Shown piece after piece: positions 18,879 to 51,239 of a stretch of 64,000 nucleotides of DNA. Under the pieces are notes generated by a model, which was given only the letters and a program-made list of their open reading frames with translations, did not search any database and was not told where the DNA came from. Position 1 is the first letter of the stretch; each line of letters starts with the position of its first letter. The DNA comes from Pristiophorus japonicus (lineage: Eukaryota), in assembly GCF_044704955.1 (NCBI RefSeq), contig NC_091999.1, positions 29,140,001 to 29,204,000 of the forward strand, read 5' to 3'. A program made the translations under genes and the position numbers.

Positions 18879-19074
18879 TAATTAGACATTACTATTTTTA
18901 GTGAACAAATGTATCATTTCCCGTGTCCCAGCTCCTGTAAATACTGGCCGTAAAGGGATCGAATCCTCAGGAGGCTCCACACTGCTGGCTGTTCATGAGT
19001 CAGTGATCTCGCATCACATTCATGGGCTTCTGCTGTGTGTGTTTAATAAAGTGTCAGGAGCATTTCACAAACAG

Positions 19075-19560
19075 TGAGGAACCAGTGAGTGTAGAACTGA
19101 CCCCAGCCAGAGTCAGTACCTTCAGGGGAGGGGAACCAGTGAGTGTAGAACTGAACCCAGCCAGATCCAGCACCTTCAGGGGAGGGGAACCAGTGAGTGT
19201 AGAACTGAACCCAGCCAGAGTCAGCACCATCAGGGGAAGGGAACTAGTGAGAGTAGAACTGAACCCAGCCAGAGTCAGTACCTTCAGGGGAAGGGAACCA
19301 GTGAGTGTAGAATTGAACCCAGCCAGAGTCAGTACATTCAGGGGAGGGGAGCCAGTGAGTGTAAAACTGAACCCAGCCAGAGTCAGCACCTTCAGGGGAA
19401 GGGAATTAGTGAGAGTAGAACTGAACCCAGCCAGAGTCAGTACCTTCAGGGGAGGGAAGCCAGTGAGTGTAGAACTGAACCCAGCCAGAGCCAGTACCTT
19501 CAGGGGAGGGGAACCAGTGAGTGTAGAACTGAACCCAGAAAGAGTCAGTACCTTCAGGTG
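19075..19560 (+). repeat. 60-bp ZNF-associated tandem array, ~8 copies
   Basis: Same unit as 13385-13600, with period ~57-60 bp. Confidence 0.95.
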
Positions 19561-20400: not shown

Positions 20401-20404
20401 GGTG

Positions 20405-22926: not shown

Positions 22927-23456
22927 TGTTTTGGATCGATAATAATAGATCCAGATTCGGGATCTGGATGAATGTTAAATAAGAGACAAGACAAATGAAG
23001 TAAAGATAAAACACCATTTACTGAGAGAAAGGAAACATCATAGAGTTTACGAAGAAAAGGGAAGTATGATAAGATGCAACAAAGGTCACGGCCTTCGGCC
23101 CGTCGGGAACTCCGCAACGACGGCTGGTCTGGAGCCTTAGGGGTCCCGGCACCACTCGCGAATCATGGTCTAAGGTGAAATTCAAAGAGCTACTGGTCAG
23201 TTCCGTTCCTTTATACTATTGAATAAACATGGGTGCATGTGGCTTATGGACAACTCCTAATCTGTAAGTCCCCAGCTTTTCTTCCACAAAGCATGAGGCC
23301 TCGAGGCGCTGATCGTCCCATAAACAAGATGGTGTGCGCATCAAGGTCTCTCTCTCTCTCTGGATCAACAACATTCCACGAGGCATGAAGCAGAATACAC
23401 ACTGTAAGTGTCGGAATATCATAATTAACCCTATGTGATTAACCCTATACAATACA
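22927..23456 (-). repeat. 3' LTR of the class III ERV
   Basis: Direct repeat of 28721-29259 (roughly 90% identical by eye). The minus strand reads TGTATTG...AAAACA, with TATAAA at ~23210. Confidence 0.92.
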
Positions 23457-23514
23457 ATCCAAACTTGATATTTAGACATTCTAAGTAATATAATCGAGTT
23501 GAAAGCGTAGTGCA

Positions 23515-23979
23515 TCAGTTACATATTGTGTATGCGCGAACAACGCCCACAATCTACATCAAAGAATACATACATATCAGAAATAACGCGATGAGTAAAA
23601 CAACGATAGGATGTAGTAACAGCTTCAAAGCGGCAGATGTCTTTGGGGACCATCCGTAAAAGATATCCCACCAATGGTGTACCGTAAGGTCAATGACAGT
23701 TGTCGCAACTCTGACCAAGGCGCTTTCACTGTAACTCATAGCAACTTGCAGAGTATGAAGAGTACGCCCTCGTTTGTTCAATTCGTCAGTGACCTTTTGA
23801 TTATCTTTTAGAAATTGAGCTTAACGAGTTAGGTCTACAGTGGGAGGAAGGTTAGTAATTGTCTTGCGTACGATCAGTGTTAGCTATCCGCCACCCCATG
23901 CTGTGTTTGAGGATGGAAGTAGCACAGTCACAGATAAGGAGACACAGAGGCTGGCCAGCACGAGTTGGTAAGTCGCCAT
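23515..23979 (-). pseudogene. env: Miniature env-like ORF (signal peptide, heptad region, Trp-rich motif, TM) with 3 in-frame stops
   Basis: One frame from ATG 23979 reads MATYQLVLASLCVSLSVTVLLPSSNTAWGGG*LTLIVRKTITNLPPTVDLTR*AQFLKDNQKVTDELNKRG...HHWWDIFYGWSPKTSAALKLLLHPIVVLLIALFLICMYSLM*. A splice acceptor TTCCTCCCACAG lies just upstream. Confidence 0.7.
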
Positions 23980-24021
23980 TTTGTGCAGAATTCCTGTGGG
24001 AGGAATCATAATTATATTAAT

Positions 24022-26711
24022 TCAGCCCCGTTTAGTCAATTTACCCTTGTCAACAGAGAGAGGAAAATCTTGACCCGTCAGGAGCACACAATAAGTGTTT
24101 CGTTCTCCTTTCACTAAGATTTCCCCTGCTTGTAAGCGTTTCTGGGGGTACTGCACCCACACTTTTCCTCCTTCACAAACTGTGTCCTGAGTCTGATTTT
24201 CTTTTTCAATAGTAGGGACACTAACTTTGCCTAACATGTGGCTTATGGGAGTTCCCCCCAACAATGGTCGGTGATTCAGATTGCGCACTGCTTGTGGTAA
24301 GATCTTTAACCACCCTTGCAATGTGTTAGTGGGAGTTAATATTTTAATCTGTTGTTTAAGTAATCCATTCCTGCGTTCCATTAAACCTGCAGCTTGCGGA
24401 TAGTAAGGTTTGTGAAACATCCAATAGATCTCGTTGTCTACCGCCCACCGTTGCACTGTTTGACCTGTGAAGTGCGACCCATTATCGGACTGTACTTCTG
24501 CCGGCTCACTGTAGTATGTGATTAAATTCTCCAGTCCTTTAATTGTACTTGGTTGATTCGCTTTAGTCACTGGATAAGCGAACAAAAGTATAGAATAGGT
24601 ATCAACAACAATGAGCAAATATTGGAACCGTTGTTGCAATGGTAAAGGTCCTACATCATCAACTTGCCATGTTTCTGCTGGTTGAGTCCCTCTCTTAATA
24701 TGGCACCGTGTTGTCGTTGTTGGGGAAAATGCTTCACCTTTTGACAAATTTCACAGGTGTTTATGATCTGATTAACACCGTCCGTCGTCAAATGTAACCC
24801 CTTATCTCGTGCCCACTGTATCGTACCCTGAATGCCCAAATATCTAGATTTGTGGTGGACCCACTTGCCTATGCCATATTCTTCCTCTTCCGCCTCTTTG
24901 ACAGCCCGTACCCGGGCTATATTATCAACGGTGTTATTATATTCAGAGGTCTTTGAAGTATTTTTCATGTGAGTGTCCACATGATATACAGTTATTTTCA
25001 TCTTCTGGGCTTTGGACCATATTTGTTCCCATAGGTATTTTCCCCACAAGTCTTTCCCAGTTATTTGCCAGTTATGTTCATGCCAGTTTCGCATTCAGCC
25101 CGCCATGCCATTGGCTACTGCCCATGCGTCAGTATATATGTTTACTTGTTGCTGTTCCTCTTCTAACGCAAGGACTACAGCTGCTAGTTCTGCTTGCTGG
25201 CTGGAGCCTCCCACGCCCTCATCATGCACAATTGTCTGGGTTTTTGTATTGAAGGCAGCGGCTCGCCATCGCCGAAAGCCATTTCGCCAGACCGCTGAGC
25301 CACCTGTGAACCAGGCATGGCTACGTTCTTCGGGTGTTAACTGTTCAAAAGACACGCCCCAGGGGATCGGTGACTCTTTGGTTAAACTGACAGACGACTG
25401 CGTAAGTTCACTCTCAACTGTTTGTGGGTATTCAGCCACATGCTCATGTAGCCGGGTGATTCCTTCTTTCCCTTTACTTGCTCTGTCTGCGATATACCAT
25501 TTCGAGCGCACTATGGAGCTTTGCTGCACTCGCCCGACCTTATGTGTCTCATTTTCTGACAGAACCCAGGATAATATGGGTAGGTCTGGTCTTAAACTGA
25601 CTTTGGCGTCCCCTGTCTGTCCTTCTGATTCTGTAAGGGCCCAATAACATGCTAATAATTGTTTCTCAAATGGAGTGTAACGAGCAGCAGCATCTGTCAA
25701 TGTTCTAGACCATAACCCTAACGATATACGAGTGCCATGTTGAACCTGCCACAAACTTCATACTGCAGTATCATTGGTAACGGATACCTGGAGCTCAAAA
25801 GGCTGTCCAGGCACTCGTGGGGCTAGGGGTAAAGCTTGAGCTACGGCTTCTTTGGCTGCATGTTGTTCCTTTCCCCACTCGAAGTGGGCCTTTTTTCGTG
25901 TTACGGCATACAACGGTTTTAAAAGCATCGTGAGGTGAGGGTTGTGTCTCCTCCAGTAACTCAATAGTCCCACGAACCGTTGTGTCTCAGTTTTATTCGT
26001 GGAGGTGGCCATTTCTTGAATGTTATTCTTCACAGGCTCGGGTATGACGCGCTCACCCCGAGACCATTGGATCCCCAGAAACTGGACAATCTGGCTCGGG
26101 CCCTGCATCTTCTTCGGATTTATCTCCCAGCCCCTGTCTCTCATGTGTTGGACTAAAGTAGCTAGGGCTTCTGACACCACAGCCTCGGTGGGATCCCTTA
26201 TTAGTACATCATCGATGTAGTGTGCCAGTGAGGCATTAGGAGCCAACGTGCACATGTCCAGGTCCCGGGCCACCAATCCTTGGCATAGGGTAGCGCTATG
26301 TCGGTAACCTTGAGGTAGGCCTTTAAACGTGTATTGTCTCCCTTCCCAAGTGAATGCAAACTGGTCCTGGGATTCTTTCGCTATTGGAATGGAGAAGAAG
26401 GCATTGGCCAGGTCGGTTACCGCATACCACTCCGCACCTTCTTGAGACAGCCGCTCTGTTATAGTTACTACATCTGGGACAGCAGTTGCCAGGAGAGGGG
26501 CACATTTGTTCAGTTGTCGGTAATCCGCAGTCATCCTCCAACTTTTGTCGGATTTCTGCACACGCCAAACAGGGCTATTGTAGGGGGACACCACATGTCT
26601 AATGATTCCTGCCTCCAAGAGCCCTTGTATGGTTTCCCCTATTTCTTTGTGTCCCCCAGGTATGCGGTACTGTTTCATAGTCACTATACGCGATGGCCAT
26701 GGTATTACCAC
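24022..26711 (-). pseudogene. pol: ERV pol (RT, tether/RNase H, integrase), disrupted
   Basis: RT motifs SPYNSPVW, DLANAFFSIP, LPQGY and HYIDDVLI; RNase H YTPFEKQLLA, AWFTGGSA, SSQQAELAAV and NIYTDAWAV; integrase TWQVDDVGPL, VQSDNGSHF and GLMERRNGLLK. Stops at ~25755 and ~25095; frameshift at ~24700. Confidence 0.93.
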
Positions 26712-27070
26712 TGGTTCCTACTTTGCTTCCCTGCAATCTCAGTGATCGCCCATATCCCGAATGAGAATCGCCCAAACGAGTTGTTGTGTGTGATTCCCTT
26801 TAAAAGGTCCATCCCAATAATATGTTCCTTTACTGCCGATATTAAGACCGTTATCCAGCGCGGAGGCCCATTTCCCAACGCCATTTTGATAGTTGTTCGG
26901 ACAGCGGGCGTTTCTGCCCCTCCGAACCCATTAATCATCACACGGGTCCCTGTGTGTTTCCTAGGGTTTCCATGGATAATAGTAACTTCTGCCCCTGTGT
27001 CTAGTAAAGCAACATCTCTTTGTATGTTCGCCCCTGCTCCGCCACTGTATCGTAATCGGAATGTGTGGCC
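26705..27070 (-). pseudogene. pro: ERV aspartic protease
   Basis: DVALLDTGAEVTIIHGNP at ~26965-27015, followed by EHIIGMDLL. Confidence 0.85.
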
Positions 27071-28691
27071 TCAGATCCCCGGGAACTTGGGTTGATGTGG
27101 TTCTAACGGGGAGTACTCCCGGATCCTGGCCACACCCCATTCGAGGGGATTACTAGCCTTCCACAGCTCTTCTACGCTGGGGTATAGGCTAGTGGGAGGT
27201 GGTTTCTCCGCATCCGCAGACTTGTCGCTATCCGACTTAGTCTCCCTTACCTCCCTCCTTTTTCCCTTCCCTGTTCCCGGGACGCAGCGTTGCTTCCACA
27301 TAGAATACATTGCTCCTGTTGGGATTCCATCAATTTTTTCCTTGGGGACCCCTGCTTTCAGTAAAGCCGTGAACATGTCCCTCCGCAAAATTATTTTTTT
27401 TTCTTTCCTGACCCTATATCTTTCCCAGAGGTCGAACCTTGTCGCTGGTCCTGATCCCCCTCTACATTAGCCGTTCTCGACTCTCCCACACTATCTTCTA
27501 CATCCTCTAACTGTCCTAACAACAGGAAAGCGTCCCCTACCCGCTGCCCTTGGGCTGGTCCCAATAATGCGAGTAGTGCACCCCTCATCATAGGAGGGTC
27601 ACTCTTCATCAGCCTGCTCTGCATTCCTGCCGTAAAGAGCTCCTGGTCTGGCCCCCCATATTGTTGGTGATATATTCCTCCCTGTGTTGCCATGTTGCGC
27701 AATTGTATTGCACCCTCTCCCACAGTACTCCAAGGTTTTACCTCCACTTCCAAATCAACGGAGAGGGATATTTTTGCTGGACCCCTATAATAACCATGTC
27801 CCATAGCGACTTGTTCCCTGGACATTCCGTAGCACTGCTGTGATATAGTGGTCCGTAATCATAGTCCTCAGTTTTGTTAACTCTTCAGGGTTAAATATTA
27901 CGCCTGATGCTCCCTGATCCCAAATCCGGGTTAGCCATTCTGACAATGGTTCCTCGGGTTTTTTGCGAAATCGAGACCCTATTTCTTGTAACTCACTAGT
28001 GGTCAAGTCACGCACCCCTCTAGTGGTTACCAGCTGTTCCCCATCTTGCTGTTTCGCCTTATTTGTCATAAGGGGTCTAGCTTTCGTGCTCGGAGCGTAT
28101 GGGGGAGGATTTTTAGTTTCCTCCCGTTCCCCCCCTCTCCATCTGTCCACTCATATTCTGAGTCAGAGGAGTACCAGATGTCTCCTTCCCAATGAGCCGG
28201 ATCCCAAGTGGGTCCAGCTACCAATGCACGTACCTTTGACCGATCTATCTGCAATTTCCATCGTCTGGCTTTTTAATAATTTTGTACTTTCACCAGATGG
28301 CATATTAAAGTTTCTGATTGTTCATTGAGCTTGTCCACCCGTTATTGTGCAGTGCGGACCGCTTCAGTGAGAGTCGAGTTTTGACTTTCAAAAACTTTAA
28401 CAGCTGTTTTTAACTCTAGGTTTTCTGCCTCACTTTCCTTAAGTTGTTTACACATCGTCCTTAATGCTGTCAACAAAATCCATTCCATTTGTGAGGGGCT
28501 ACTTTTCTCCTGTGGGCTACGGTTCTATCTTTGCTCTGTTCCAATAACTGCATATCCCAATGTTGCGGGGGTGCAAACTGGGCTAGCACATTGGCAAGAG
28601 AGCCAAAACCCTCATCACACGTGCTCCACCCTGGTATTCTATACTTCTCTCCCGCAGGAGGAGACTGCTCCTTGTCTTTTCTCTTAAACAT
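27071..28691 (-). pseudogene. gag: ERV-L-like gag, disrupted
   Basis: ATG at 28691 (MFKRKDKE). ERV-L-type blocks LTTSELQEIGSRFRKKPEEPLSEWLTRIWDQGA and LLKAGVPKEKIDGIPT; late-domain PPPY; several stops and frameshifts. Confidence 0.85.
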
Positions 28692-28720
28692 TTTACCAGA
28701 TCATGTTCGTGACGTCAACA

Positions 28721-29259
28721 TTTTTTGGATCGATAATAATAGACCCAGGTTCGGGATCTGGATGAATGTTTAATAAGAGACAAGACAATTGAAGTAAAGA
28801 TAAAACACCGTTTACTGAGGGAAAATAAACATAATACAGTTTAAGAAGAAAAGAGAAGTATTATAAGATGCAACAAAGCTCATAGCCTTCGGACCATCGG
28901 GAACTCCGCAACGACGGCTGGTCTGGAGCCTTAGGGGTCCCGGCACCACACGCGAATCACGGTCCAAGGTGAAGTTCAAAGAGCTACTGGACAGTTCCAT
29001 TCCTTTATACTATTGAACAAACATGGGTGCATGTGGTTTATGGCCAACTCCAAATCAGTAAGGCCCCAGCTGTTCTTCCACAAAACATGAGACCTCGAGG
29101 CGCCGACCGTCCCATAAACAAGTTGGTGTGTGCATCAAGGTCTCTCTCTCTCTCTCTCTCTCTCTGCATCAACAACATTCCACGAGGCATGAAGCAGAAA
29201 CAAACTGTAAATGTCGAAATATCATAATTAACCCTATGTGATTAACCCTACACAATACA
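28721..29259 (-). repeat. 5' LTR of the class III ERV
   Basis: Direct repeat of 22927-23456, followed on the minus strand by PBS-like TGTTGACGTCACGAACATGATC. Confidence 0.92.
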
Positions 29260-29500
29260 GGGGCCACAAGCCGCACCCCTTGCACACGCTGATTGGTTGG
29301 AAGACTAACCGCCCACCCAGACCTCCAGCTCCACAACTGCTCTCCCTATTGGTCGGGAGCTGCCGTCAATCAGCCAGGCAGTGTGAGCTGAGCATGCGCG
29401 GTGCGTGAGACAGGGGGTCAGAGATGGGTGGAGGGAGGGAGCGATTTAATAAAGGACGTGCATATTTGTACTGCAAAAATGGCCGCCATGCTCCAACCTT
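29260..29500. promoter_or_regulatory. CpG promoter-like module paralogous to the ZNF promoter at ~12.0 kb
   Basis: ATTGGTTGGAAGAC...CCTCCAGC...ATTGGTCGGGAGCTGCCGTCAATCAG matches 12040-12122. NRF1-like GCATGCGCG and YY1-like AAAATGGCCGCC are also present. Confidence 0.55.
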
Positions 29501-29664
29501 TTTCCATGATTGGTTCCTTTGGAAGATAAGCCACAGCCTGAGGTGTCACTCGAATGTGTAACTGAAACCGCCCATCCCAACGTCTCATTTACTTTGCAAA
29601 TTGTAACTTGATCCACTTTGACTTCCTGAAACAACAGAGGCAGAGCTCCCAGAAGACAGCGACT

Positions 29665-30290
29665 GCCAGCCAAAGTGTCTTGCCCCAGTCCCAGTGCATC
29701 CTTCCCCAGTCGAAGTGCCTTACTCCAGTACTAGTATATGCCTCCCCAAGCCAAAGTGCCTTATCCAGTCCCAGTGCATTCCTCCCCCAGCCAAAGTGCC
29801 TTACCCCAGTCCCAGTATATGCCTCCCCAGGCGAAGAACCTTACCCGAATATATGCCTCACCCAACCAAAGTGCCTTACCCCAGTCCCAGTATATGCCTC
29901 CCACAGGCGAAGAGCCTTACCCCAATATATGCCTCCCCCAATCAAAGTGCCTTACCCTAGTCGCAGTGCATGCTTCCCCCAGCCAACGTGCCTTACTCCA
30001 GTCGCAGTGGAAGTTTCCTCCAAACGAAGTGCCTTACCCCAGTCCCGGTGCATGCCTCCCCCAGCCGAAGTGCCTTACCCCAGTCCCAGTGCATGCATCT
30101 CCCAGCCGAAATGCCTTACCTCAGTCTCAGTGCATGCCCCCACCCCAGCTAAAGTGCCTTACCCCAGTCCCAGTGTACGCCTCCCCCAGCCAAAGTGCCT
30201 TACCCCTGTCCCAGTGTACGCCTCCCCAAGCCGAAGTGCCTTACCCCTGTCCCAGTGTACGCCTCCCCAAGCCGAAGTGCCTTACCCAAG
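29665..30290. repeat. ~41-bp minisatellite, ~15 copies
   Basis: Unit CCGAAGTGCCTTACCCCAGTCCCAGTGTACGCCTCCCCAAG, with period 41 at 30193, 30234 and 30275. Confidence 0.9.
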
Positions 30291-30319
30291 TTTTATTTCT
30301 CTGCACCACATGCACAGAA

Positions 30320-30720
30320 TGATTCGGGCCCAGATGGGGCGGGGCTTGTCTCCGGTCAGTCACAAAGTGCAGAACCAATAGTTCCCTGCGTTAATAAACC
30401 CCGGGCGGGACACGCAGCCCAAGCGCGGGCCCAGGCCCGAGAGACAACACTCGGCACCATCCGCTTCACATACACCCGGGCTCGTCCCCAATAACCGAAT
30501 CACAGCCCGGTTCCAGGCCCAGTCAGTGAGCGTCCGGGGCAGCGGGCTCAGCGGCCGTCATCTTGGTCAGGTTTGGGGAGCGGGCTCAGTGGCCGCCATC
30601 TTGGTCAGAGCGGATCTCGCGGCGCATGCGCGGCCCTTTGGGCAGCGATAATGGATGGGCGGGGCTTCAGTCAGTTTGATTGGACACATGTTTGTGACCA
30701 GGTCAGTGGGCCCTGACAGG
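30320..30720 (-). promoter_or_regulatory. CpG-island promoter-like segment
   Basis: YY1-type GCCGCCATCTTGG (~30592) with a variant at ~30554, NRF1-type GCGCATGCGC (~30622), GC boxes and CCAAT boxes. Confidence 0.55.
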
Positions 30721-30756
30721 GAGCCTTGTTGTGCTGACTGTTGTCTGGTGACCCTG

Positions 30757-31282
30757 TGCCAGCCCGGCTCATCCTATTGGGCCAGCCCAAGCTCGGCCTA
30801 TGGGTCCAGCCCGGCTCATCCTATTGGGCCAGCCCGGCTCACCCTATTGGGCCAGCCCGGGCTCACACTATTGGACAGACCCGTCTCACCCTATTGGGCC
30901 AGCGCGGGTTCACACTATTGGGCCAGCATGGCCTCAACCTATGGGGCCAGCATGGGCTAATCCTATAGGGCCAGCACAGACTCATCCTATTGGGCCAGCC
31001 TGGGCTCACCCGATTGAGCAAGCCTGGGCTCGCCATATTGAGCCAGCCCGGGCTCGCCCTATTGGACCAACCCGGCTCACCCTATTGGGCCAGCATGGGT
31101 TCACCCTATTGGGCCAGCATGTGCTCACCCTATTGGACCAGCCCGGGCTCACCCGATTCGGCCAGCTCGGGCTCACCATATTGGATCAGCATGGGCTCTC
31201 CCTATTGGGCCAGCCCGGCTCATCCTATTGGGCCAGCACAGGCTCACCCTTTTGCGCCAGCACAGGCTCACCCTATTGGGGG
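30757..31282. repeat. ~23-24-bp minisatellite of ATTGG/CCAAT-containing units, ~22 copies
   Basis: Unit CCTATTGGGCCAGCCCGGCTCA(C/T). Confidence 0.9.
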
Positions 31283-31819
31283 CCATTCTCCGGGGTTGTG
31301 CTAATTTGGGCGTTTGTGTCAGGTTTCTAACCCGTGCTGTACCTGCCCTGGGAGAGTGAAAGTACTCTGCCGTGTACTGAAGTGTGACAATCTGTGACGG
31401 AATGGAGTCCTGTTTTTTAATAGAACCTGCCATGTGACTGTGACAGACCATAATATTAGAGGAGACTGCATGGTGCACCTGGTCGTTGTGCCGTAATTCC
31501 GCCTCTGGGACCGATACAACAAGGCAGTGGTCGAGGTGTCTTTACTCCGATGGGACATTGGGTGGCGCCGTGGGTCATTCACCAATGGGACTTGGGTTCA
31601 ATCACATCCCAGACAGAACGGGTGAAACATACCTGTCAGGCAAATAAAACACAGTGTGACAGGAAAAATGAAGCGGTGTACAGGAGCCATGGAGAAAATC
31701 CAAGTTACTTCAATTTGTCATTCCAGATTTATTAACAATTTCACAGAAAACAATTTACAGGGAAGTGTAAAAAAGTGAACACAAAGTGAATATAACTGAG
31801 CAATACATTGAGAACCGAA

Positions 31820-32606: not shown

Positions 32607-32615
32607 TCACTTGAG
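32607..32615 (-). CDS. IGHM: IgM TM2 exon coding part (L-K-stop)
   Basis: Acceptor CTCTTTTACAG|CTC AAG TGA; candidate AATAAA signals at 32540-32545 and 32360-32365. Confidence 0.8.
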   Translation of the reverse strand, partial: LK

Positions 32616-32755
32616 CTGTAAAAGAGGGATAAAAGAATGAAGCGGAATTTTAGTGGTCCGGGTCATTTATCTCAGGGTTTTTATTAATGAAACATCCAGA
32701 GATTTGTCAAACGGCTTCAGTCAGATGGAAGTGTGAGCGGATTGAATCTTCCCAC

Positions 32756-32883
32756 CTTCACCAGAGTGACGGCAGCGCTGTAGGAAATGCTCAGGAAGAA
32801 CAGGATGATGAATGTGGAAGCTGTTGTCCAGATGTTGCCGCTCTCGTACTCATAGTCTTCATTCCAGATGTGGTCTGAGGAAT
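32756..32883 (-). CDS. IGHM: IgM TM1 exon
   Basis: Acceptor CCCCGTAG and donor GTGGGA. Encodes (D)SSDHIWNEDYEYESGNIWTTASTFIILFFLSISYSAAVTLVK with the conserved antigen-receptor TM (CART) motif. Confidence 0.95.
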
Positions 32884-33569
32884 CTACGGGGATGTAGGGG
32901 AGGAAATATATTCAGATCATTTATTAATCCCGGGTATCATACTATTATTTTATATTCTCTTTTCTTTCCCTTAAGGTATTAGTTTTTTCTTTAATTGGAC
33001 TTTCAATGTATATTTTGTGTTAAGTTAATTACTCTCAGCAATCTCTCACTGTTCCTCACTCCACTGCCGCTCTTCCTTTATGATCCCCCTGTAGTCCGTT
33101 TTGGAAAATATGATAGTTGTTCTTCCATGTCAGAGGCTAATTGATTTTGGATGACTTTGCTACGATCTATCCTTCGGGAATAATACGATGAAACATCGAG
33201 GAAGGTTTACAGCAGGATATCGATTATTTTTCCGCTAGGTTAAGGTAGTTACTTAGTTGGAGGCTGCCAAGGAGTCTATGTAAGAGATCAGTTGTGAGTT
33301 GTACCTTGTTTTTTTATTTGTTACGGCAATGCTCTGAACATAAATAACGTGTCAGTTTGCAACAACTACATTGATCCAGTGTATGTGTAAGGCCAGAATA
33401 GTAAAATGTGATATATTATGGTATCAGGAATTATTTATTCAGGCCAAGCGTTGGATACTTTATCCGTCCAAAAACTGTATCTTAGTTCTACATTCTTCTA
33501 TAGCCTGACGTTTTTGTTTGTGCTCTTTAGTGTCTCTATCACTGTATGACTATCTCTTGTTTTGGATTA

Positions 33570-34900
33570 GTCGGTGTTTGTGTTTCCCTGTGAGGGTGTT
33601 GATCTGTGGGGTTGTGCGTATGTATAGTTGTAAGATTGTGTATGTGTGTGGAAATATTTGTTTATGTTTTGTTTAAGAACGCTTGTGTTTATATGTAAGT
33701 GTGTGTGTTTATATTTAATTGTGAGTGTGCGATTTGGTGTAGGTGAGTGTGTGTACTTTTATGTGTAAACATGTTCATATCTAAGGGTTTGTGTGTGTGT
33801 GTGTATGTGTGTGTGTGTGCGTGTGCAAATGTGTTCATGTGTGTGCTTATGTGTAAGTGTATGTGTATCCTTGTGTATATGTATGTTTATGTGTATGTTT
33901 CCCTGTAAGTGTATGTGTAAGGTTATGTCTAAGCGTTTGTTTATGTTAAGGTGTAAATGTGTGTGTGTGAGTTTTCGTGTAACATTGTGTTTACCTGTAA
34001 GTTTGTGTGTGTGTGTTTTGTGTTAGTTTGTGTTTGGATTTATATGCGTGTTCATGCTTGTGTAAATGTGTTCAGGTGTGTGTTTCCCTGTAAGTGTATG
34101 GCTATGTCGCAGTGTTGTTCATGTTTAGGTGTAAGCGTGTGTGTGTTTATGTGTAACAATGGGTTTGCAGGTAAGTTTATGTGTTTGTGTGTGTGTGTTT
34201 TGTGTCAGTGTGTGTTTTGATTAATGTGTGTGTCTAAGTGCAATTGTGTATGTGCATGTAAGCGATTGTGTGTTTTGTGTAAATGTGTGTTTGGATTGAT
34301 GCGTTTGTTTACGAGTGTGTGTGTGTTTTGTGTACGTGTGTGTGTGGATTGATGTGTGTATTTATGTATGTGTAAGTCTGTTTGTGTGTTTTGTGTAAGT
34401 GTGTGTGTTGATTGATGTGTATTTATGTGTGTGTAAATGTGTTTTGTGTAAATGTGTGTGTGGATTGATGTATGTGTTTATGTGTGTAAAAGTGTGTGTA
34501 AGTTTGTTTTGCAAGTGTGTGTGTATGGATTGATGCGTGTGTCTATGTGTGTGTAAGTGTGTTTTGCGTAAGTTTGTGTGTGGATTGATGTATGTGTTTA
34601 TGTGTGTAGGTGTGTTTTGCGTAAGTATGTGTGTGGATTGAAGTGTGTGTCTATGTGTGTGTAAGTGTGTGTAAGTATCCGTTGTGTAAGTGTGCGTTTA
34701 GATTGCCGTGTATTATTGCTATTGTTCAAAGTTTTAGAGAGTACCAATAACTTGATTTGACAATGATGGTTTTCATGATATTCTAGTTATGTATAATATT
34801 ATGTGCCAGAGTGTTAATGTATGTCTTTATATGTAAGTCTATGTGTGTTTGTGTGTAATTGTGCACTTACACAAAAACACACACACTTAGACAAAATCAT
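33570..34900. repeat. Degenerate (TG)-rich low-complexity tract in the Cmu4-TM1 intron
   Basis: Long TG/TGTA-rich run; the Cys/Val-rich ORFs here are artefacts of it. Confidence 0.85.
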
Positions 34901-35664: not shown

Positions 35665-36056
35665 TCATTGACAAGAATTGACGGTGTCCATCAGAACAAG
35701 GGAAATGTTGACGAAACTGGGTTTACCGCTGGATTTATTGACGGTTCTGTTGGTGATCTTCAAGGGGATCGCTTCATGTCCCACCACACAGGAGTAAGAA
35801 GCGCCGCTGGACCACTCCTCGGCTGCAATGGATAGCAGGCTGTACATGAAGAAGGATCTGCTGCCGTTCTCCGCCATCACCTCGGTGTTCTTGTAGTTGC
35901 CCGAATCCACCGGCTTGTCATTGACGGTCCATTTGACGAAGATCTCTCGGGGGGAGAAACCTCTCACTAAGCAGGTGAGGCTGACCAACCTCTGAGCGGA
36001 GACTTCTTCTGCCGAGGGCAGGAGGACAGATACGGCTGGTTCCCGTGGAGCTTTCG
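35665..36056 (-). CDS. IGHM: IgM Cmu4 exon plus secretory tailpiece
   Basis: Acceptor TTTTCTATAG; encodes [43 protein letters not shown]...[33 protein letters not shown]. Internal donor G|GTAAAC at 35727/35726 serves the membrane form. Two AATAAA signals at 35631-35636 and 35621-35626. Confidence 0.97.
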
Positions 36057-36977: not shown

Positions 36978-37286
36978 CCTTTTCCTTGTGAATGGAATCT
37001 CTGATAGGAGTCGGCATATCCTGATGGCTCACCACGCAATAGAACTTATCCCCACTCAGCCAGTCTTGTGTCGAGATGTTTAAGTTGCTGATCACACTGT
37101 TGGGATCCTCTCCAGGTTGGACAGCAATCTCTGATTTCAAAGCCTCCTTTTCTCGGGTCCAGGACACGGTGAGTCCATAAGGAGCGTCAGACACGATGCA
37201 GGTTAAGGTCACCGTCGCCTCCAGTAAGACCTGTTCCAGTGACGGTGGGCGAAGAGTGATTTTTGAATCGCTGCATGGGACATCCA
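36978..37286 (-). CDS. IGHM: IgM Cmu3 exon
   Basis: Acceptor ATTTCGCAG and donor GTGAGC; encodes [43 protein letters not shown]...[22 protein letters not shown]. Confidence 0.97.
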
Positions 37287-39240: not shown

Positions 39241-39558
39241 CCTGAGATCTGCTGAAGTTACGGCTTTGCATGACCCCTTGATGAGTGACCTGGCAGGTGT
39301 AGACCGAGCTTGTGAACCATTCCTCGGCGGGGACCGTCAGCCGACTGGCCGTCGAGAAGTTCCCGTTCACCTTAAAGACGGGAGAGGTGATGAAGCCCGA
39401 ATCCAGGAGTTGTCCACTTTTCAGCCAATTCACGGTCAGTGACTTTGGCCGGAAATCGATGATTGAACACACAGCGCTTGCATATCTGCTGCTGGTGATT
39501 TGTTCAGTGGAACTCAGCGTGAGGAGAACAGTTGGAGGAACGATGTCCCGTTCAGGAT
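39241..39558 (-). CDS. IGHM: IgM Cmu2 exon
   Basis: Acceptor TTTTTTTTGAAG and donor GTAAGA; encodes [47 protein letters not shown]...[20 protein letters not shown]. Confidence 0.96.
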
Positions 39559-40355: not shown

Positions 40356-40655
40356 CTGTCATTGTGATGGCCCAGATCGACACACCACGTCGAACCTCGC
40401 AATAGATTGTGCTGCTCCCCACATCTGACTCGGTGATGGTTAACTGGCTGCTCTGGGTGTAGGTTCCCTTCTTGTTGAGCACTGGCGGGTAGGTCTTCAA
40501 TCCAGTGGTGATCGGCACTTTATCTTTCTTCCAGGAAAGGCTGGTGATATCGGGGGAGTAGTCCATCGCCAAACAACCGTATGTGATGGAGCCATCGGTG
40601 CTTGGTTGTTCACAGGAGGAGAGCAGGGCGTAGAGGGTAGGGGGAGACGATGTTA
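40356..40655 (-). CDS. IGHM: IgM Cmu1 exon
   Basis: Acceptor TTTTTTCCCAG and donor GTTAGT; encodes [44 protein letters not shown]...[17 protein letters not shown]. The light-chain-linking Cys is retained. Confidence 0.97.
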
Positions 40656-44612: not shown

Positions 44613-46556
44613 TTAGGTTCAGACCAATCTCATTCAATAATTATCTGATGCTCAAACTGCATAAACATTACTAATTAGTTACATGCAGATTGAAGTTTCT
44701 TCAATATTTTTAGAAAATCACTCAAATGAGATACAAGATAGATTCGATAGAGTAAATCTCCCTCTTCACTGATCTGTCTGGCGCTGTAAGGTCATGTAAA
44801 GCAAAGGATGAATGCATATTAAACTACACTACCCTGTAAGACGGGTCAAATATAACAAGGTTTAGATTCCGAGTAAAATTATTTCTGTACTGTGCCATCA
44901 ATCCGCACAGGGCAGGTACAGCATGGGTCAAGATACAGAGTAAAGCTCCCTCTACATTGTCCCATCAAACATGCCCAGAGCAGGTACAGTATGGGTCAGA
45001 TACAGAGTAACACTCCCTCTACACTGTCCCATCAAACACTCCCAGGGCACATACAGCATGGGCTAGATACAGAGTAAAGCTCCTTCTGCCCTGTCCCATC
45101 AAACACTCCCAGGGCAGGTACAACCGGGTTAGAAAATGATTAAAGCTCCTTCTACTGTCTCCCCGTGGTGTTTCGGAACTGCTCCTTCTGATTACCACAA
45201 TCTGGGTTACCGATTTCATTTCTGCGGCGACTCATCAAACTTAAATTAAATCTTTCACGTTTCTCACATATACCAGTTCCTTAAATAACTGAGTTAAATT
45301 ACACTCTCCGCAATACAGAATCACAACCCAGAAGGTTTACAACCAGTCAGAAGGACTCCTGATTCTCACACAGTGAGCAGGCGCACAGAAACAGAACAAA
45401 CACAAACGGTGCAACAATGGTGCTCCAGGCAGAGAGTCCAGTTCAATCTCTTAATTTCAATTAAGCTGTTTGATTTCTAATTTATTTCTTGTCAATTTCC
45501 AACCACCTCAACTCTGCAAATTTTTTAAAATTAAACTGATATTAATTTGAGAGACTCTGCAACATCCAGCCATTTTCCCATCTCTGTCAGCTATCTTCTA
45601 AACCGTGCAAAAATTAACTCCCCTGAAAGCAAGTATCAGGAAATAATTCACATTCCACGGGAATTTGCTGCCTGTCGCATGGGACTCGGTGACAGAATAA
45701 GAATGTCACAATCCAGGAGACATCTACATTGAAACCTGATCACCCACTGATTTGATATATTTTCATCAGTAAATATAACGTGTAAAATCATCGAGGCAAA
45801 ACAGGAAGTTAATTCACTAAAATCTGCAGCGGCACCTTATCGAACTCAGCACAGCCGAGTTATAAATGCATTGATTTATAAATTAATTTAGGAATTAATT
45901 AAACATTCTCTCCAACCATTGAGGTTTTGCAATAACTATAATACGAACCAGTATGCAACGCAATTGCAAGGGATCATTTATGTTTAATAAATGATCACTG
46001 ATGTTACATTCTAATTAATGTTCATGTTCGCTGATTATTGAAAATAATCTGAGTGCCTGTCTGGCCCTTCCTCCTCAGAAGCACACTTACCTGAAACATT
46101 TGAAATTAACTTAATGTGCAGAATTTCAGCCTTACTAATACAGCCAAGATTTGTTATTGAGAGACAGCTTTTGGTCTTGCAAAGTGTTCAAGATTAGTTT
46201 AGTGATAATTCTATCAAACAACACACAATATCTATTCAATAACAAATTTCGGCTGCACAGTAAGAATGTCATACACCGGCAGATATATTAAATGGAAAAA
46301 ATGCAATATAAAACACGGCTTTAAGTTACAAATAATTGTGCTCAGTCATGCATCTGTGTAAACAGGAGGTAGCAAGTAATTGAAAACCCTAATCAATCTG
46401 AACACAGCGCTGGAATCAGTCTGTTGTCAGTGAAATAATTGCAGGCATAATTAATAACTGTATCCAGCCTCTAAAAGTTTCCGCTCCCTTTAATGGTGCC
46501 CAGTGTACAGCAGGATTTTGGAAGGCGAATAATATTAAGTAAATGAGAATTGAACT

Positions 46557-47765
46557 TATAGCATATTTTAATAACACTGGGAGGTATCGCATTATAATCG
46601 GTTGGTTAATATTAATTTAATTCCACTACAACCTAAACACTTATTAATTATGTATATGGTAATTAGTTACATTTCACACAATAAAATATCAGCATCGTAA
46701 ACATAGATTAATAGTTGAATATATAATTATCACTTCAATAATTGTTATGTTAAAATACATTTCAATGATTTATGATTTCTAACACCTTCCTGTTCTCTGC
46801 CTACAATCTGTTTCCAAACAGTTTCAAACATATATCATTATTGCATTCGAGCGTAAACCTGCTGCTGCTCGCTGACACCGATATTAAACATTGTAGAAAC
46901 GCGAAACTGCTTCACAAATTCTCGGTATTCTGAGTAACACAGGCACAAACTCTCCTCAGCAGATCAACACTAAATCACATCACTGAGGGGCGGAATCCCT
47001 CGACAGAATCTTTCATGGAGCAGACCCTTCATTCTATAAACTCTTTCAGCAGAATCAAATGTATCCTTGCAAAAAATCTCATTACACAATCACCAAACCC
47101 GCCTAACAATGAAATAACTAATGATTGAATTCAACAGAAATGTAAAATACTGACAGCAGAATTGTGATTTGACAGATCATGCTGAATAAATTAATGTTCA
47201 TATTATAGCATATTTAATAATAATTGGTGATATTACTACATTATAATAATGTTAGTAATATTAATTTAAATCTTCCGGCTGGAAATATTAATTTTTCAGT
47301 TCTTAATTACAGTAACACTTCACGTATTTAATCTGAGCGTTCGGGATCATTCGCTCAGTTGATGAGAATGTAATTTTAATTAAAAAACATTAAATTCCTT
47401 AAGATTATTTACTGATCGCTAAGCTTTCTGTTTTGTGCCTACAATGTTCCTTTAAATAGATTTAAACACAATGTTTGCATTCGATCAGAAGAACTTCAAC
47501 AATCAGAGGTCACCGAGATTAAACATTGCAGAAACGTCAAACAGTGTAACAACCATAAAGTATTTAAAGTAACCCAGGCACACAGTCGTCAGCGAATAAA
47601 CACCAAATCACATCAACAACATTTTCTGTGGAGAAACTGTTGAATTCTATAATCATTTTGCAGCAGAATCACATTGAGCATTGCAAAAAATCTCAAAACA
47701 AAATCCACCGAACCCAAGTTTCAGTGAACGAAATAATTATTAAAATAAACAAAAATATAAAATAA
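46557..47765. repeat. Old tandem duplication (~600-650 bp, two copies) just 3' of JH
   Basis: Colinear shared blocks TATAGCATATTT, GCCTACAAT, TTGCATTCGA, ATTAAACATTG.AGAAACG, AAATCACATCA and TTGCAAAAAATCTCA at 46557-47150 and 47204-47765. Confidence 0.75.
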
Positions 47766-47808: not shown

Positions 47809-47856
47809 CTGCAGTCACCGTCACCATGGTCCCTTGTCCCCAGTAGTCCATAGCGT
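47809..47856 (-). CDS. IGHJ: JH segment, possibly a germline D2-J fusion: AMDYWGQGTMVTVTA
   Basis: ACGCTATGGACTACTGGGGACAAGGGACCATGGTGACGGTGACTGCAG followed by donor GTAAGG; contains the WGXG motif. Confidence 0.96.
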
Positions 47857-47884
47857 CACAGTGAGACACGTTGTGTCAAATACT
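47857..47884 (+). promoter_or_regulatory. 12-bp-spacer RSS 5' of JH
   Basis: CACAGTG (47857-47863), 12-bp spacer AGACACGTTGTG, nonamer TCAAATACT (47876-47884). No nonamer is present at 22/23-bp spacing (GGCGGACTG). Confidence 0.85.
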
Positions 47885-48199
47885 CCGGCGGACTGTTAAC
47901 TGTAAAATACAGAGATTAATTTGCACGCAGCTTTGAAAGCCTGATTCTGACTCCCCTAAGAGTGAATCAGTGAGATACTTCAGTTTGTACCGTTCATTAT
48001 ATTTATAAAAAATGATTGGAATACTTCTGAAGCAGCTGTGCAGATTCAGCATGTCAATCAAGAGTAATAAAGCAGAAAAATGTGATACATTTAAATATAT
48101 ATATATCTTACTTCCACTTATTATTTTTACTTAAACCTCAGTTCCTTCGACGCTCCTGGCGTGGTAGCGATCGCATGTTTGTGCAAATTCCATGTCTGG

Positions 48200-48282
48200 G
48201 GTTTTTGTATGGTAAGCTCGCTCTGCATACCACCGTGGCCCACTGCTGTAGTCCCACAGTGACAGGAACCCGCACAAATACT
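48200..48282 (-). other. IGHD: DH segment (D1 type) with a 5' 12-RSS and a 3' 22-RSS
   Basis: Coding GGACTACAGCAGTGGGC (48238-48254), open in all three frames. 5' RSS CACAGTG-12-ACAAATACT (48255-48282); 3' RSS CACGGTG-22-ACAAAAACC (48237-48200). Confidence 0.95.
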
Positions 48283-48689
48283 GCCCTCACTCTCTGCTCA
48301 GTACTAACTCTCAACGTACACTTCAAATAGACATTCACTTCAAATACACATTCGCTTCTGATCAAGTTTAGAATTTAGCCAACAGTTTACACAACACAAT
48401 AGAAAGTGAACACACTTCCAACCAGCTCCCTGCATGTACCAGGCACAGTGAATCGAGCATCATCTCCAGCTCTGCAATTGCTGACACTGTTCACATTAAA
48501 CAGGAGCACAACCAAAACTACCCCTCAGTACATGGGTTAGTGTGTTAGATTTTCACCATTGAATTCTCAGTGTCTTAGTTTTGTAAGAAGCGGTTTATGG
48601 TCTTGTTCTGAACACTGTTGTTAACATTGCATTTGTCACACTTACTGACCGTCAGGTTATGATGAAAATTGTTGAATTCCCTCTCGATC

Positions 48690-48728
48690 TGTTCTTGTAC
48701 GGGTCCAGCCCTGGTTCCTCTCGCTGTG
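48690..48728 (-). promoter_or_regulatory. 23-RSS of VH
   Basis: CACAGCG (48728-48722), 23-bp spacer, ACAAGAACA (48698-48690). Confidence 0.93.
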
Positions 48729-49033
48729 GTACCTTGCACAGTAATAGATGGCGGTGTCTTCGCTCTTCAGGTTCTTCATGTCCAGCGCGAAGATGTTGTT
48801 TGAAGTGTCTTTGGACGCAGTAAATCGGCTCGCAATCCCTGCGGCATAATACTTGTTCGATGGACTGTAATACTGAAGCAGCCACTCCAGCCCCTGTCCG
48901 GGAATCTGGCGGATCCAGTACATGTAGCTGCCACCAAGATCGAAGCCGCTGGTTTTACAGGTCAGTCTCAGGGAGACCCCGGGAATCCTGGTCTCTGCCT
49001 CGGGCTGAGTCAACACCACATCCGACTGGACAC
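48729..49033 (-). CDS. IGHV: VH exon (shark IgM type), unrearranged and open
   Basis: Acceptor TTTTCACAG; encodes [52 protein letters not shown]...[11 protein letters not shown]. Confidence 0.97.
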
Positions 49034-49159: not shown

Positions 49160-49205
49160 GGGAAAAGAAAACCAGCAACACACTGAGAGAAATCGCCAAC
49201 CTCAT
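49160..49205 (-). CDS. IGHV: VH leader exon
   Basis: Encodes MRLAISLSVLLVFFS, then C|GTGAGT; the phase-1 split matches the V exon. Confidence 0.95.
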
Positions 49206-49370: not shown

Positions 49371-51002
49371 CCACATCACACCTTCCGCATCATGAACAGA
49401 ACGGACTCACATCTGGACTGTAAGTTAAATCCCTTTATTTTCTCACTGTTTCAAGGGGGTGTGAATCTCTGAGATTGAATTACATTATCAGGGTCTAAAG
49501 ACACTGCCATTTTGTGTTTCTCCATCTCCCACTATCTATCCATGCATCTGTACCAATAAAGTATCGCTTATAATCTGAATTGTTATCACTCTATGTAACC
49601 AAATGCGGGAGATGGGTAATGTGATTCTTTTTACGGTGTACATGGCTAAAGCTACACACTTTTGGTCTGGAGATGAGATCATACTCCTCACATTATGCAA
49701 TTGTCTCTCATTGCATTTCACTAACTGCCCCTGAGTCTGTGACCCTAAGACAGCCGTTTGTAAAATTAGCTGTAAAATAAGTCCGATTGACTGATGATAA
49801 AGGAGTGAGTTGACGGAGACACATAAGAAAATGGGTCCCGCCCGCTTCAGACCTGCGTTTTATGAGAGAATCTTGTGAATCAGAACCGATAATATGATCA
49901 GCAAACCTCGACATTCAAATCCTTGTAGCTAACTTTAATAGCGACCGACTGTGTAACAGACACGGGTAACAGGAACTCGGTGTATCAGGACATAGCGGTA
50001 TGTTACAGAATATCACAGGAGTAAATGCTTCATCTCCAGCAGAAACAGATCACAATCTGGGCATTTCACCACCCAATGGTAGCCGGGCTATGAGAGGGTT
50101 TGTTCAGGGATCCAAATCAGCGCAAATTACACCGCACACTGCGCGGCTACTAATCTGGAATAATGGAGACATTAGTTTAGACCAGGCGCAAAATTCTGTG
50201 AGAATATTAAAGAAGTGCAGCTGGCACTTCTCTGTGAGAATATTCAAGGCAATTGAACCTGTTTTAGTTACGTTGCGAATCTCACTCATCTTATTACAGT
50301 GTGGGATGAGGCCATTAAACCTCTCTCCAGCACTTCATGCTGTACTGAATAAAGTGACTGAATGGTCTAGAATGGTCTTTATTTGGAAATAGTTTTCCTT
50401 AGATACCGTGTGGATCAATTCATTATTTTCCGATCTTATCTTATAATATGGCGAGCTAAGAATTTATGGAAAATCATTCTTGAGATGTTATACCAAGTAA
50501 AATGCTTCTTATTTTAAAAGTTCGACTGAATAATTTAATGTTCAAATAGTTAAATACCATCTTTCTCCCATTCTTGTTCACGCTAATCTGACCCACACAA
50601 TATTTGGCAGTAACCTAACCGACTGACGTCAGCGAGCCTCGAACATCAGTGTAATTTACAGGAAGCATGTGGGGTTCTGTCCAGTCCATCAAAGGTCAGT
50701 TTTCTCACTACTGACCGCATGCCTGGAAGCCAACTTCAAAACCTTCACATGGTAAAAAGACCTATTTATAAACACATCTACCCAGTAACAGTACTGGAGT
50801 TAAGTTTAATTTTTTGCGTTGTGTAAATGTGTGTAACTGTTCCCATATCTCAGGAAAGGAAGTATATCCAATGTCTCAGAAACCATGTCAATAGCAGCAG
50901 TCAGCTGGAGTATCAGTACCGCACATAACCCTGTAATAGATAGATAAATAGATAGATAGATAGATAGATCGATAGAGAGATAGATTCGTAGCTAGCTAGC
51001 TA

Positions 51003-51239
51003 NNNNNNNNNNNNNNNNNNNNNNNNNNNNNNNNNNNNNNNNNNNNNNNNNNNNNNNNNNNNNNNNNNNNNNNNNNNNNNNNNNNNNNNNNNNNNNNNNN
51101 NNNNNNNNNNNNNNNNNNNNNNNNNNNNNNNNNNNNNNNNNNNNNNNNNNNNNNNNNNNNNNNNNNNNNNNNNNNNNNNNNNNNNNNNNNNNNNNNNNNN
51201 NNNNNNNNNNNNNNNNNNNNNNNNNNNNNNNNNNNNNNN
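51003..51239. other. Assembly gap (N run) preceded by a (GATA)n microsatellite
   Basis: Run of N; GATA repeats at ~50935-51000. Confidence 0.99.

What the first reader, a model, noticed from the sequence alone, without database searches (positions are those of the whole stretch)
47809..48728. IgM cluster with TCR-beta-like signal layout V-23 / 12-D-22 / 12-J, a probable germline D2-J fusion
Seen: only one D is present. JH is preceded by CACAGTG-12bp-TCAAATACT, nearly identical to the nonamer of the D's own 5' signal (ACAAATACT), and there is no 22/23-spaced nonamer. The D-J distance (~380 bp) is about one intersegment interval. Known: typical shark IgM clusters are V-23 / 12-D1-22 / 12-D2-12 / 23-J, and RAG-mediated germline joining occurs in cartilaginous fish. 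Inference: D2 was joined to J in the germline and trimmed to at most ~2 nt, so J inherited the 5' 12-RSS of D2. The cluster would still rearrange, needing two joins instead of three, and could also join V directly to J, which 23/23 spacing normally forbids at IgH. This predicts a short-CDR3 IgM subclass.
Basis: partly seen in the sequence, partly recalled or inferred. Interest (0 to 1): 0.85.

Follow-up and report, generated by a model that had tools for sequence, protein, structure and literature searches.

The report
One-D shark IgM cluster, 12-RSS J
An intact shark IgM antibody gene cluster has one D segment instead of two, and its J segment carries the recombination signal that normally precedes the second D; this inherited layout is a modest new variant of known shark germline rearrangement and is common in this genome.

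Summary
On the minus strand lies a complete, open IgM minicluster: leader, V, one D, J, Cmu1-4 and TM1-2. The signals read V-23 / 12-D-22 / 12-J, with no nonamer 22 or 23 bases from the J heptamer.

Contigs of the same species (run X1) show three things:
- One paralogue has a homologous 12-RSS followed by a D2-like coding piece and its own 3' heptamer.
- Other paralogues, also in a second species, have J behind an ordinary 22-spaced RSS.
- Multi-copy paralogues have this same 12-RSS-J layout.

Homology therefore breaks at the heptamer. D2, its 3' RSS, the D2-J interval and J's own RSS were removed at signal borders in inherited DNA.

A RAG hybrid joint gives the same product and I could not separate the two.

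This cluster is not unusual within its genome. About two fifths of the depth at J continues into this flank. This scan had already reported the same layout in at least six other windows of the chromosome.

The predicted direct V-J joins and short CDR3 remain untested. Germline VD1-D2J joins and a germline hybrid-joint signal swap are already described in sharks. Verdict: new variant of a known kind, moderate interest.

The parts
49160..49205 (-). Leader exon (ATG at 49205, GT donor at 49159)
   Evidence: Read; coordinates. RNA-like contigs of a related species cover the leader and V but not the intron.
48729..49033 (-). VH exon, ending ...YYCARY
   Evidence: Pfam V-set, E 4.4e-15; translation. 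Leader plus V is 351 nt and in frame. The best protein matches are shark VH at 67-75% identity.
48690..48728 (-). V 23-RSS: CACAGCG, 23-base spacer, ACAAGAACA
48255..48282 (-). D 5' 12-RSS: AGTATTTGT, 12-base spacer, CACTGTG
48238..48254 (-). The single D coding segment (17 nt, D1-like, no stop in any frame)
   Evidence: Germline VD-joined paralogues join V to exactly this 5' end (joint 48254 to 48732).
48200..48237 (-). D 3' 22-RSS: CACGGTG, 22-base spacer, ACAAAAACC
47864..48230 (-). D-J interval between the two heptamers (367 bp; it takes in the D 3' signal's spacer and nonamer and the J signal's nonamer and spacer). I read it as the former D1-D2 interval.
   Evidence: It has no homology to the V-D interval. 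Paralogous contigs of the same and related species cover parts of it (tables 2 and 8).
47857..47884 (-). 12-RSS on J: AGTATTTGA, 12-base spacer, CACTGTG. This is a D2-type 5' signal.
   Evidence: In a paralogue of the same species a homologous signal is followed by a D2-like coding piece and a CACAGCA heptamer (loose end at 47857).
47809..47856 (-). JH coding segment (48 nt, AMDYWGQGTMVTVTA), GT donor at 47808
   Evidence: RNA-like contigs of a related species splice from 47809 to a Cmu1-like sequence (loose end at 47809).
40386..40655 (-). Cmu1 exon
   Evidence: C1-set domain; open frame and splice sites
39241..39558 (-). Cmu2 exon
   Evidence: C1-set domain
36978..37286 (-). Cmu3 exon
   Evidence: C1-set domain
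35668..36056 (-). Cmu4 exon with the secretory tail and an internal TM splice donor at 35727
   Evidence: C1-set domain, E 1.6e-20; tail
32607..32883 (-). TM1 (32883-32756) and short TM2 (about 32615-32607); AATAAA at 32545

Best explanation
**What it is.** This is an intact, unrearranged IgM heavy-chain minicluster. It belongs to a derived, multi-copy cluster type of this shark.

**How it arose.** In an ancestral V-D1-D2-J cluster, recombination at signal borders in the germline removed four things: the D2 coding segment, D2's 3' 12-RSS, the D2-J interval and J's own 22/23-RSS. The 5' 12-RSS of D2 was left directly on a full-length J. The agent was most likely RAG. The cluster type then spread by duplication.

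**Which kind of joint.** Two RAG routes give this product:
I put this at about 0.4.
- A hybrid joint of the D2 5' signal end to the J coding end. I put this at about 0.3.

**How it should work.** This part is inferred, not shown.
- The cluster needs two joins instead of three. These are V(23) to D(12) and D(22) to J(12).
- The spacer rule also permits V(23) to J(12), a join without D.
- Without D2, CDR3 should be shorter on average than in two-D clusters.

**Shown:** the layout, the intact reading frames, the D2-type origin of the signal, and the multi-copy status.

**Inferred:** RAG as the agent, the kind of joint, and all functional consequences.
For: **Layout.** It was read directly and is far beyond chance.

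**Complete open cluster.** Leader, V, D, J, Cmu1-4 and TM1-2 have correct phases and splice sites.

**Contigs laid on the stretch:**
- A contig of organism A (run X1) matches from 47857 upward. In place of J it continues with 13 D2-like letters (GTACAGTGGGTGG) and then a CACAGCA heptamer.
- Two X1 contigs and two contigs of organism C (run X10) match J and the heptamer up to 47863. They then continue with a 22-base spacer and a nonamer reading ACAATAAC. That is an ordinary J signal.
- Homology therefore switches exactly at the heptamer.
- No length difference at 47856/47857 is reported for the organism C contigs (0 of 98.3 depth carries the insertion).
- X1 record 1 (261 nt, 47820-48079, depth 181.7 against about 11-30 for most other listed pieces) carries the same 12-RSS-J layout in several copies.
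- X1 depth is 1107 just downstream of J and 430 just upstream of the signal.

**Interval size.** The D-J interval of 367 bp is about one interval, and it is not a copy of the V-D interval.

**Precedent.** Germline VD1-D2J, VDD-J and VDJ clusters and one germline hybrid-joint signal swap are described in horned shark and skate (PMC2193153; PMC5192425).

**Direction of change.** V-D1-D2-J is described as the general cartilaginous-fish layout (PMC2435157; PMC5192425).
Against: - Only 30 letters of the D2-bearing contig's unmatched part were shown, and the length of its matched part was not shown. Homology may therefore cover little more than the signal itself.
- Contigs are short and come from a multi-copy family. 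None was shown to be this exact copy. At several positions every X1 contig differs from the window (table 3), and only 43% of sampled words were found in X1.
- The tissue of the sequenced sample is unknown.
- No D2 letters or N/P letters mark the junction, so there is no positive RAG footprint beyond the position of the break.
- The multi-copy paralogues carry two extra letters between the heptamer and J (table 4). I cannot explain them.
Confidence: 0.7

Rival explanations
1. RAG hybrid joint (a precise signal swap). RAG cut at the D2 5' 12-RSS and at the J 22/23-RSS, which form a legal 12/23 pair in the same orientation. The D2 signal end was then joined to the J coding end, and everything in between was deleted. 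This is a sub-version of the best explanation. It is listed separately because it contradicts the first reader's coding-joint route.
For: - The heptamer is intact and J appears full length and colinear with ordinary J copies. No D2-like letters remain.
- Signal ends are normally joined without loss (established knowledge of V(D)J recombination).
- A germline hybrid joint that swapped 12- and 23-spacer signals between D1 and D2 is documented in horned shark (PMC2193153).
Against: - Hybrid joints are much rarer than coding joints in somatic cells (my own knowledge).
- Nearly all germline events known in sharks are coding joints.
- Other windows of this genome were read by earlier agents as keeping D-like letters on J, which would fit coding joints with variable trimming (unchecked notes).
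Confidence: 0.3
2. Deletion without RAG. Replication slippage or microhomology-mediated repair between the two identical direct CACTGTG heptamers (D2 5' and J) removed one heptamer and everything between them.
For: The break lies within a 7-base direct repeat shared by both parents, so the product is exactly what such a deletion gives.
Against: - Seven bases is weak microhomology for a deletion of roughly 400 bp.
- This genome holds many other joins placed at signal borders, such as VD-joined and VDJ-joined paralogues. Those fit recombinase activity in the germline, as established for sharks (PMC5192425).
Confidence: 0.08
3. The one-D V23/12-D-22/12-J layout is original in this lineage, and D2 was never present in this cluster type.
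For: - The layout is common in this genome (scan notes).
- It has the same grammar as TCR beta and delta loci.
Against: - The same species keeps paralogues with a D2-like segment behind a homologous 12-RSS, and J copies with a 22-spaced signal.
- The two-D layout is described across sharks, skates and chimaeras.
Confidence: 0.07
4. Artefact. Either an assembly collapse between D2 and J, or a somatic D2-J join from lymphocyte DNA. V-D-DJ is a common somatic intermediate in nurse shark.
For: - V-D-DJ intermediates exist in shark lymphocytes and thymocytes (PMC2435157).
- This exact copy was not recovered as one bridging contig.
Against: - The same junction stands in independently built short contigs at a depth several times that of most other listed pieces (record 1).
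- It recurs in many windows of the assembly.
- The junction has no N additions or D2 remnant, unlike typical somatic joints.
- A rare somatic form would not become the assembly consensus.
Confidence: 0.03

Closest known systems
Partly germline-joined shark and skate IgM clusters (VD1-D2J, VDD-J, VDJ; Kokubu et al. 1988, as summarised in PMC2193153 and PMC5192425)
   Same: - Inherited removal of DNA between gene segments, exactly at recombination-signal borders.
- In VD1-D2J clusters the J-side unit is also preceded by the 5' 12-RSS of D2 and pairs with the 22-spaced signal of D1.
- Same minicluster architecture and same isotype.
   Different: - Here V and D1 are still separate.
- No D2 coding letters remain, so J itself carries the 12-RSS.
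- The form V-D-(D)J is not among the germline forms listed in the reviews I could read. It is described only as a somatic intermediate.
Germline hybrid-joint signal swap between D1 and D2 in a horned shark IgM cluster (Kokubu 1988, discussed by Lewis in PMC2193153)
   Same: A germline RAG event changes which spacer type sits on which segment, without destroying the cluster's ability to rearrange.
   Different: That case is an inversion of the D1-D2 interval and keeps both D segments. This one is a deletion that loses D2. Its joint type is not established.
TCR beta / TCR delta signal grammar (V-23 / 12-D-23 / 12-J)
   Same: The same order of spacer types, so the spacer rule alone would allow V to join J directly.
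   Different: - This is an IgM cluster by its V, Cmu1-4, secretory tail and TM exons.
- The long spacer on D is 22 bases.
- Whether a 'beyond 12/23' restriction blocks V-J joining here, as at TCR beta, is unknown.
Canonical cartilaginous-fish IgM minicluster V-23 / 12-D1-22 / 12-D2-12 / 23-J
   Same: V, D1 with its two signals, J coding, the C exons, the segment spacing of about 370-460 bp, and a cluster span of about 16.7 kb.
   Different: D2 is missing with its 3' signal, and the J signal is 12-spaced instead of 22/23-spaced.

Membership tests
Cartilaginous-fish IgM minicluster | Leader and VH exon with a 23-spaced signal | tested here: met
   V-set domain; RSS read
Cartilaginous-fish IgM minicluster | Own set of four Cmu exons with an IgM secretory tail and TM exons within about 15-20 kb | tested here: met
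Cartilaginous-fish IgM minicluster | Two D segments (D1 12/22, D2 12/12) | tested here: not met
   There is only one D, with 12/22 signals.
Cartilaginous-fish IgM minicluster | J with a 22/23-spaced signal | tested here: not met
   The spacer is 12 bases. The consensus match at 22 and 23 bases is 2/9 and 1/9.
Germline-rearranged (RAG-joined) shark Ig genes | Breakpoints exactly at signal/coding borders relative to unjoined paralogues | tested here: met
   Paralogous contigs diverge at 47857 (D2-bearing) and at 47863 (ordinary J signal).
Germline-rearranged (RAG-joined) shark Ig genes | Present in inherited (non-lymphoid) DNA | tested here: inconclusive
   Multi-copy depth and recurrence across the assembly argue for inheritance. 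The tissue of the sample is unknown, and this exact copy was not bridged by a contig.
Germline-rearranged (RAG-joined) shark Ig genes | Coding-joint footprint (remaining letters of both segments, trimming, N/P letters) | tested here: not met
   No D2-like letters remain at the 5' end of J in this copy. Paralogues have two extra letters of unclear origin (table 4).
Germline hybrid-joint signal swap | Intact signal of one segment joined to the coding end of another legal 12/23 partner | tested here: inconclusive
   The product fits, but a fully trimmed coding joint or a heptamer-to-heptamer deletion fits equally well.
TCR beta/delta locus | TCR-type V and C domains | tested here: not met
   The C exons and tail are IgM. 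V matches shark VH. Only the spacer grammar resembles TCR.

The most novel reading that the evidence does not exclude
A large, expressed subfamily of IgM clusters in this shark has switched to the TCR-beta-like grammar V23 / 12-D-22 / 12-J through a germline RAG signal swap. It really makes D-less V-J heavy chains as well as one-D chains. That would be a living example of the signal-swapping step proposed to explain why Ig and TCR loci differ in signal layout. It would also be a natural test of whether a 'beyond 12/23' restriction exists at an Ig locus.
Probability: 0.2. Interest if true: 0.6.

Novelty: new variant of a known kind. Interest (0 to 1): 0.4.

Why it matters
Sharks are the one group in which the antibody recombinase is known to have edited antibody genes in the germline.

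This cluster type shows an outcome that the reviews I could read do not list. A whole D unit is removed cleanly, so that J inherits a D-type signal, and the cluster stays able to rearrange. The resulting type has then multiplied.

It turns a three-join heavy-chain gene into a two-join gene with TCR-beta-like signal grammar. This offers a natural setting for two questions. The first is how signal layouts changed during the evolution of antigen-receptor loci. The second is whether spacer rules alone decide which segments join.

The practical weight is modest. The mechanism is of a known kind, the layout is common in this genome, and nothing is yet known about its expression.

Tried and rejected
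1. **Fetching complete IgM clusters of other sharks.** I took V-protein hits in Chiloscyllium, Scyliorhinus, Rhincodon and Mustelus to the look-up of encoding contigs. No full alignment with D1-D2 and D2-J intervals of two-D clusters was therefore possible.
2. **Is the D-J interval a copy of the V-D interval?** There is no homology beyond 7-15 base chance words. The two 12-RSS flanks are alike only in the heptamer and nonamer.
3. **A second cluster or leftover D2 / 23-RSS in the window.** None was found.
4. **Literature.** I found no open-access description of a germline V-D-(D)J IgM cluster or of a shark JH with a 12-spaced signal. Kokubu 1988 (PMC454840) and Hsu 2016 (PMC4874517) are not held.
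5. **Expression.** No run of the window's own species on record as RNA holds the stretch. Run X11 of a related species looks like RNA and shows many V-J joints with 14-34 letters between. These cannot be assigned to this cluster or to one-D clusters.
6. **Scan notes by sequence.** The search came back blank.
7. **Octamer upstream of V.** No ATGCAAAT lies near the leader. Only a TATA-like TATTTAA lies near 49300. I did not pursue the promoter.
8. **Artefact readings** (assembly collapse, somatic join) were rejected for the reasons given under rival explanations.

Full report
**What is there**

The finding lies on the minus strand. Reading that strand gives:
- a leader exon at 49205-49160;
- a VH exon at 49033-48729, ending ...YYCARY;
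- a V signal of CACAGCG, a 23-base spacer and ACAAGAACA;
- after 460 bp, a D flanked by AGTATTTGT-12-CACTGTG on its 5' side and CACGGTG-22-ACAAAAACC on its 3' side, with 17 coding bases at 48254-48238 that are open in all frames;
- after a further 367 bp, AGTATTTGA-12-CACTGTG directly abutting a 48-base JH at 47856-47809 (AMDYWGQGTMVTVTA) with a GT donor.

My own signal scan found these signals and no other D-like or J-like signal in the cluster. The 12-spaced pattern shared by the D 5' signal and the J signal occurs exactly twice in the 64 kb, against none in 100 shuffles. The nine letters at 22 or 23 bases from the J heptamer match the nonamer consensus at only 2 and 1 of 9 positions.

**It is a complete, open IgM cluster**

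- Four C1-set exons follow on the same strand.
- Their phases and splice sites are right: Cmu1 40655-40386, Cmu2 39558-39241, Cmu3 37286-36978, Cmu4 36056-35668.
- Cmu4 ends in the shark IgM secretory tail [20 protein letters not shown] and holds the usual internal donor for membrane splicing at 35727.
- TM1 (32883-32756), a short TM2 and AATAAA follow.
- Leader plus V is in frame.
- The cluster spans about 16.7 kb and is the only Ig cluster in the window.
- The closest V proteins are shark VH at 67-75% identity, from Heterodontus, Chiloscyllium, Scyliorhinus and Mustelus. The species itself is not in that collection.

**Where the J signal comes from**

The single reads call was informative instead. 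The stretch is held best by four runs of one sample of organism A (43% of sampled words). Small parts are held by runs of organisms B, C and D. I laid contigs of X1 (organism A), X9 and X11 (organism B) and X10 (organism C) at 80% likeness. Four results matter.

1. One X1 contig matches the window from 47857 upward, that is, the J signal and upstream. On the coding side it carries 130 other letters. In gene sense the first 30 of these read GTACAGTGGGTGG, then CACAGCA, then ATTACTGTCA. That is a D2-like coding segment with its own 3' heptamer behind a homologous 12-RSS.
2. Two X1 contigs and two X10 contigs match J and the heptamer up to 47863. On the plus strand they then continue with 22 letters followed by ACAATAAC. 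That is an ordinary 22-spaced J signal. Both parental forms therefore exist in the same species, and homology to this cluster switches exactly at the heptamer. None of the organism C depth at 47856 carries the two-letter insertion reported there (0 of 98.3). J here thus appears colinear with ordinary J copies and carries no D2-like letters.
3. X1 record 1 (261 nt, 47820-48079, about 9% different) has the same J / 12-RSS / upstream flank. Its depth is 181.7, against about 11-30 for most of the other listed X1 pieces. Summed X1 depth is 1107 just downstream of J and 430 just upstream of the signal. Very roughly two fifths of J copies therefore share this flank. Depth of contigs is a poor measure of copy number.
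4. The same run holds germline VD-joined paralogues (joint 48254 to 48732 with two letters between, depth 173.5). It also holds a VDJ-joined one (47842 to 48733 with 28 letters between, depth 33).

**Interpretation**

The general cartilaginous-fish layout is V-D1-D2-J (PMC2435157; PMC5192425). Against that layout, this cluster has lost D2, D2's 3' signal, one interval and J's own signal. The break sits at signal borders. The remaining D-J distance is one interval, and it is not a copy of the V-D interval.

Germline recombination of Ig genes is established in this group. VDD-J, VD1-D2J and VDJ forms are described, as is one germline hybrid joint that swapped 12- and 23-spacer signals (PMC2193153).

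Two RAG routes give the present product.
- **A D2-J coding joint with D2 trimmed to nothing.** It has the better precedent. It requires loss of all 13 or so D2 bases without damage to the heptamer and with little or no trimming of J.
- **A hybrid joint of the D2 5' signal end to the J coding end.** This is a rarer type of event. It predicts the clean border directly.

A non-RAG deletion between the two identical heptamers would look the same. I put the inherited, signal-border loss of D2 at about 0.7 overall. Within that I put the coding joint at about 0.4 and the hybrid joint at about 0.3.

The multi-copy paralogues carry two extra letters (TT in gene sense) between the heptamer and J (table 4). 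They do not match the first letters of the D2-like segment exactly, and I cannot explain them.

**What does not hold**

The cluster is not a singular event. Besides the depth evidence, this scan had already noted the same layout on other DNA of the same chromosome: s1-876492, s1-877203, s1-876494, s1-877846, s1-878450 and s1-878013. VD-joined versions with a 12-RSS J were also noted, for example s1-877410. Those notes are unchecked AI notes. I tested their common claim only through the contigs. The event, or events, therefore predate this copy and the type has been duplicated.

**Function (inferred only)**

- The cluster should need two joins, V to D and D to J.
- The spacer rule also allows V directly to J. 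Untrimmed ends would be out of frame. A join through the shared AC would give an in-frame CARYAMDYW (read; noted by s1-878293).
- In ordinary clusters V's 23-RSS may already use the same signal type at D2 and skip D1. Skipping a D is therefore not new in principle.
- No run of the window's own species on record as RNA holds the stretch.
- Run X11 of organism B behaves as RNA. Its depth falls on the leader, V and J only. It splices at 47809 into a Cmu1-like sequence. It shows many V-J joints with 14-34 letters between. It cannot be assigned to one-D clusters.

**Artefact readings**

Assembly collapse or a somatic V-D-DJ intermediate (PMC2435157) are unlikely for three reasons. The junction stands in independently built contigs at multi-copy depth. 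It recurs across the assembly. It has no N additions.

This exact copy was not bridged by a listed contig, and at several positions all X1 contigs differ from the window. Confirmation therefore applies to the layout and not to this copy.

**Verdict**

This is a real feature and an ordinary member of a common cluster type in this genome. The type is a new variant of the known germline rearrangement of shark Ig genes. Interest is moderate.

Noticed in passing
window 21416-31500: Retroelement coding remains downstream of the IgM cluster: reverse transcriptase (25758-26711, minus), integrase core (24022-24747, minus), and an aspartyl-protease-like ORF on the other strand (21416-22171, plus). I only observed these and did nothing further.
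   Followed up: partly
window 45977-47705: The J-Cmu1 intron starts with a tandem duplication of about 615-650 bp. Several matched blocks are 72-81% alike. The copy nearer J ends about 100 bp downstream of J, and no second J lies in the other copy.
   Followed up: partly
window 44859-45163: A 67-bp tandem array of about five copies in the J-Cmu1 intron.
   Followed up: no
window 33500-34800: A long low-complexity CA-rich tract, read as runs of T-H in translation, between Cmu4 and TM1.
   Followed up: no
window 18000-21000: A GC-rich stretch (0.54-0.55) with strong GC skew (0.49). It has long overlapping ORFs on both strands (up to 483 aa, 19054-20505 minus) with no convincing Pfam match.
   Followed up: partly
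paralogues of window 47842-48737, seen in runs X1, X9 and X11: Organism A DNA holds VD-joined (depth 173.5) and VDJ-joined (depth 33) IgM paralogues. In organism B, one VDJ junction core of 21 shared letters stands in both a DNA run (X9) and an RNA-like run (X11) from different samples. This suggests an expressed germline-joined VDJ gene (tables 5 and 5c).
   Followed up: partly
window 50936-51239: A GATA-type microsatellite runs into the N run at 51003-51239. The gap was left untouched.
   Followed up: no
window 47856/47857 in paralogues: The multi-copy one-D paralogues have two extra letters (AA on the plus strand) exactly between the J coding end and the heptamer (table 4). Their origin is unexplained: a D2 remnant, N/P letters or a later indel.
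   Followed up: no
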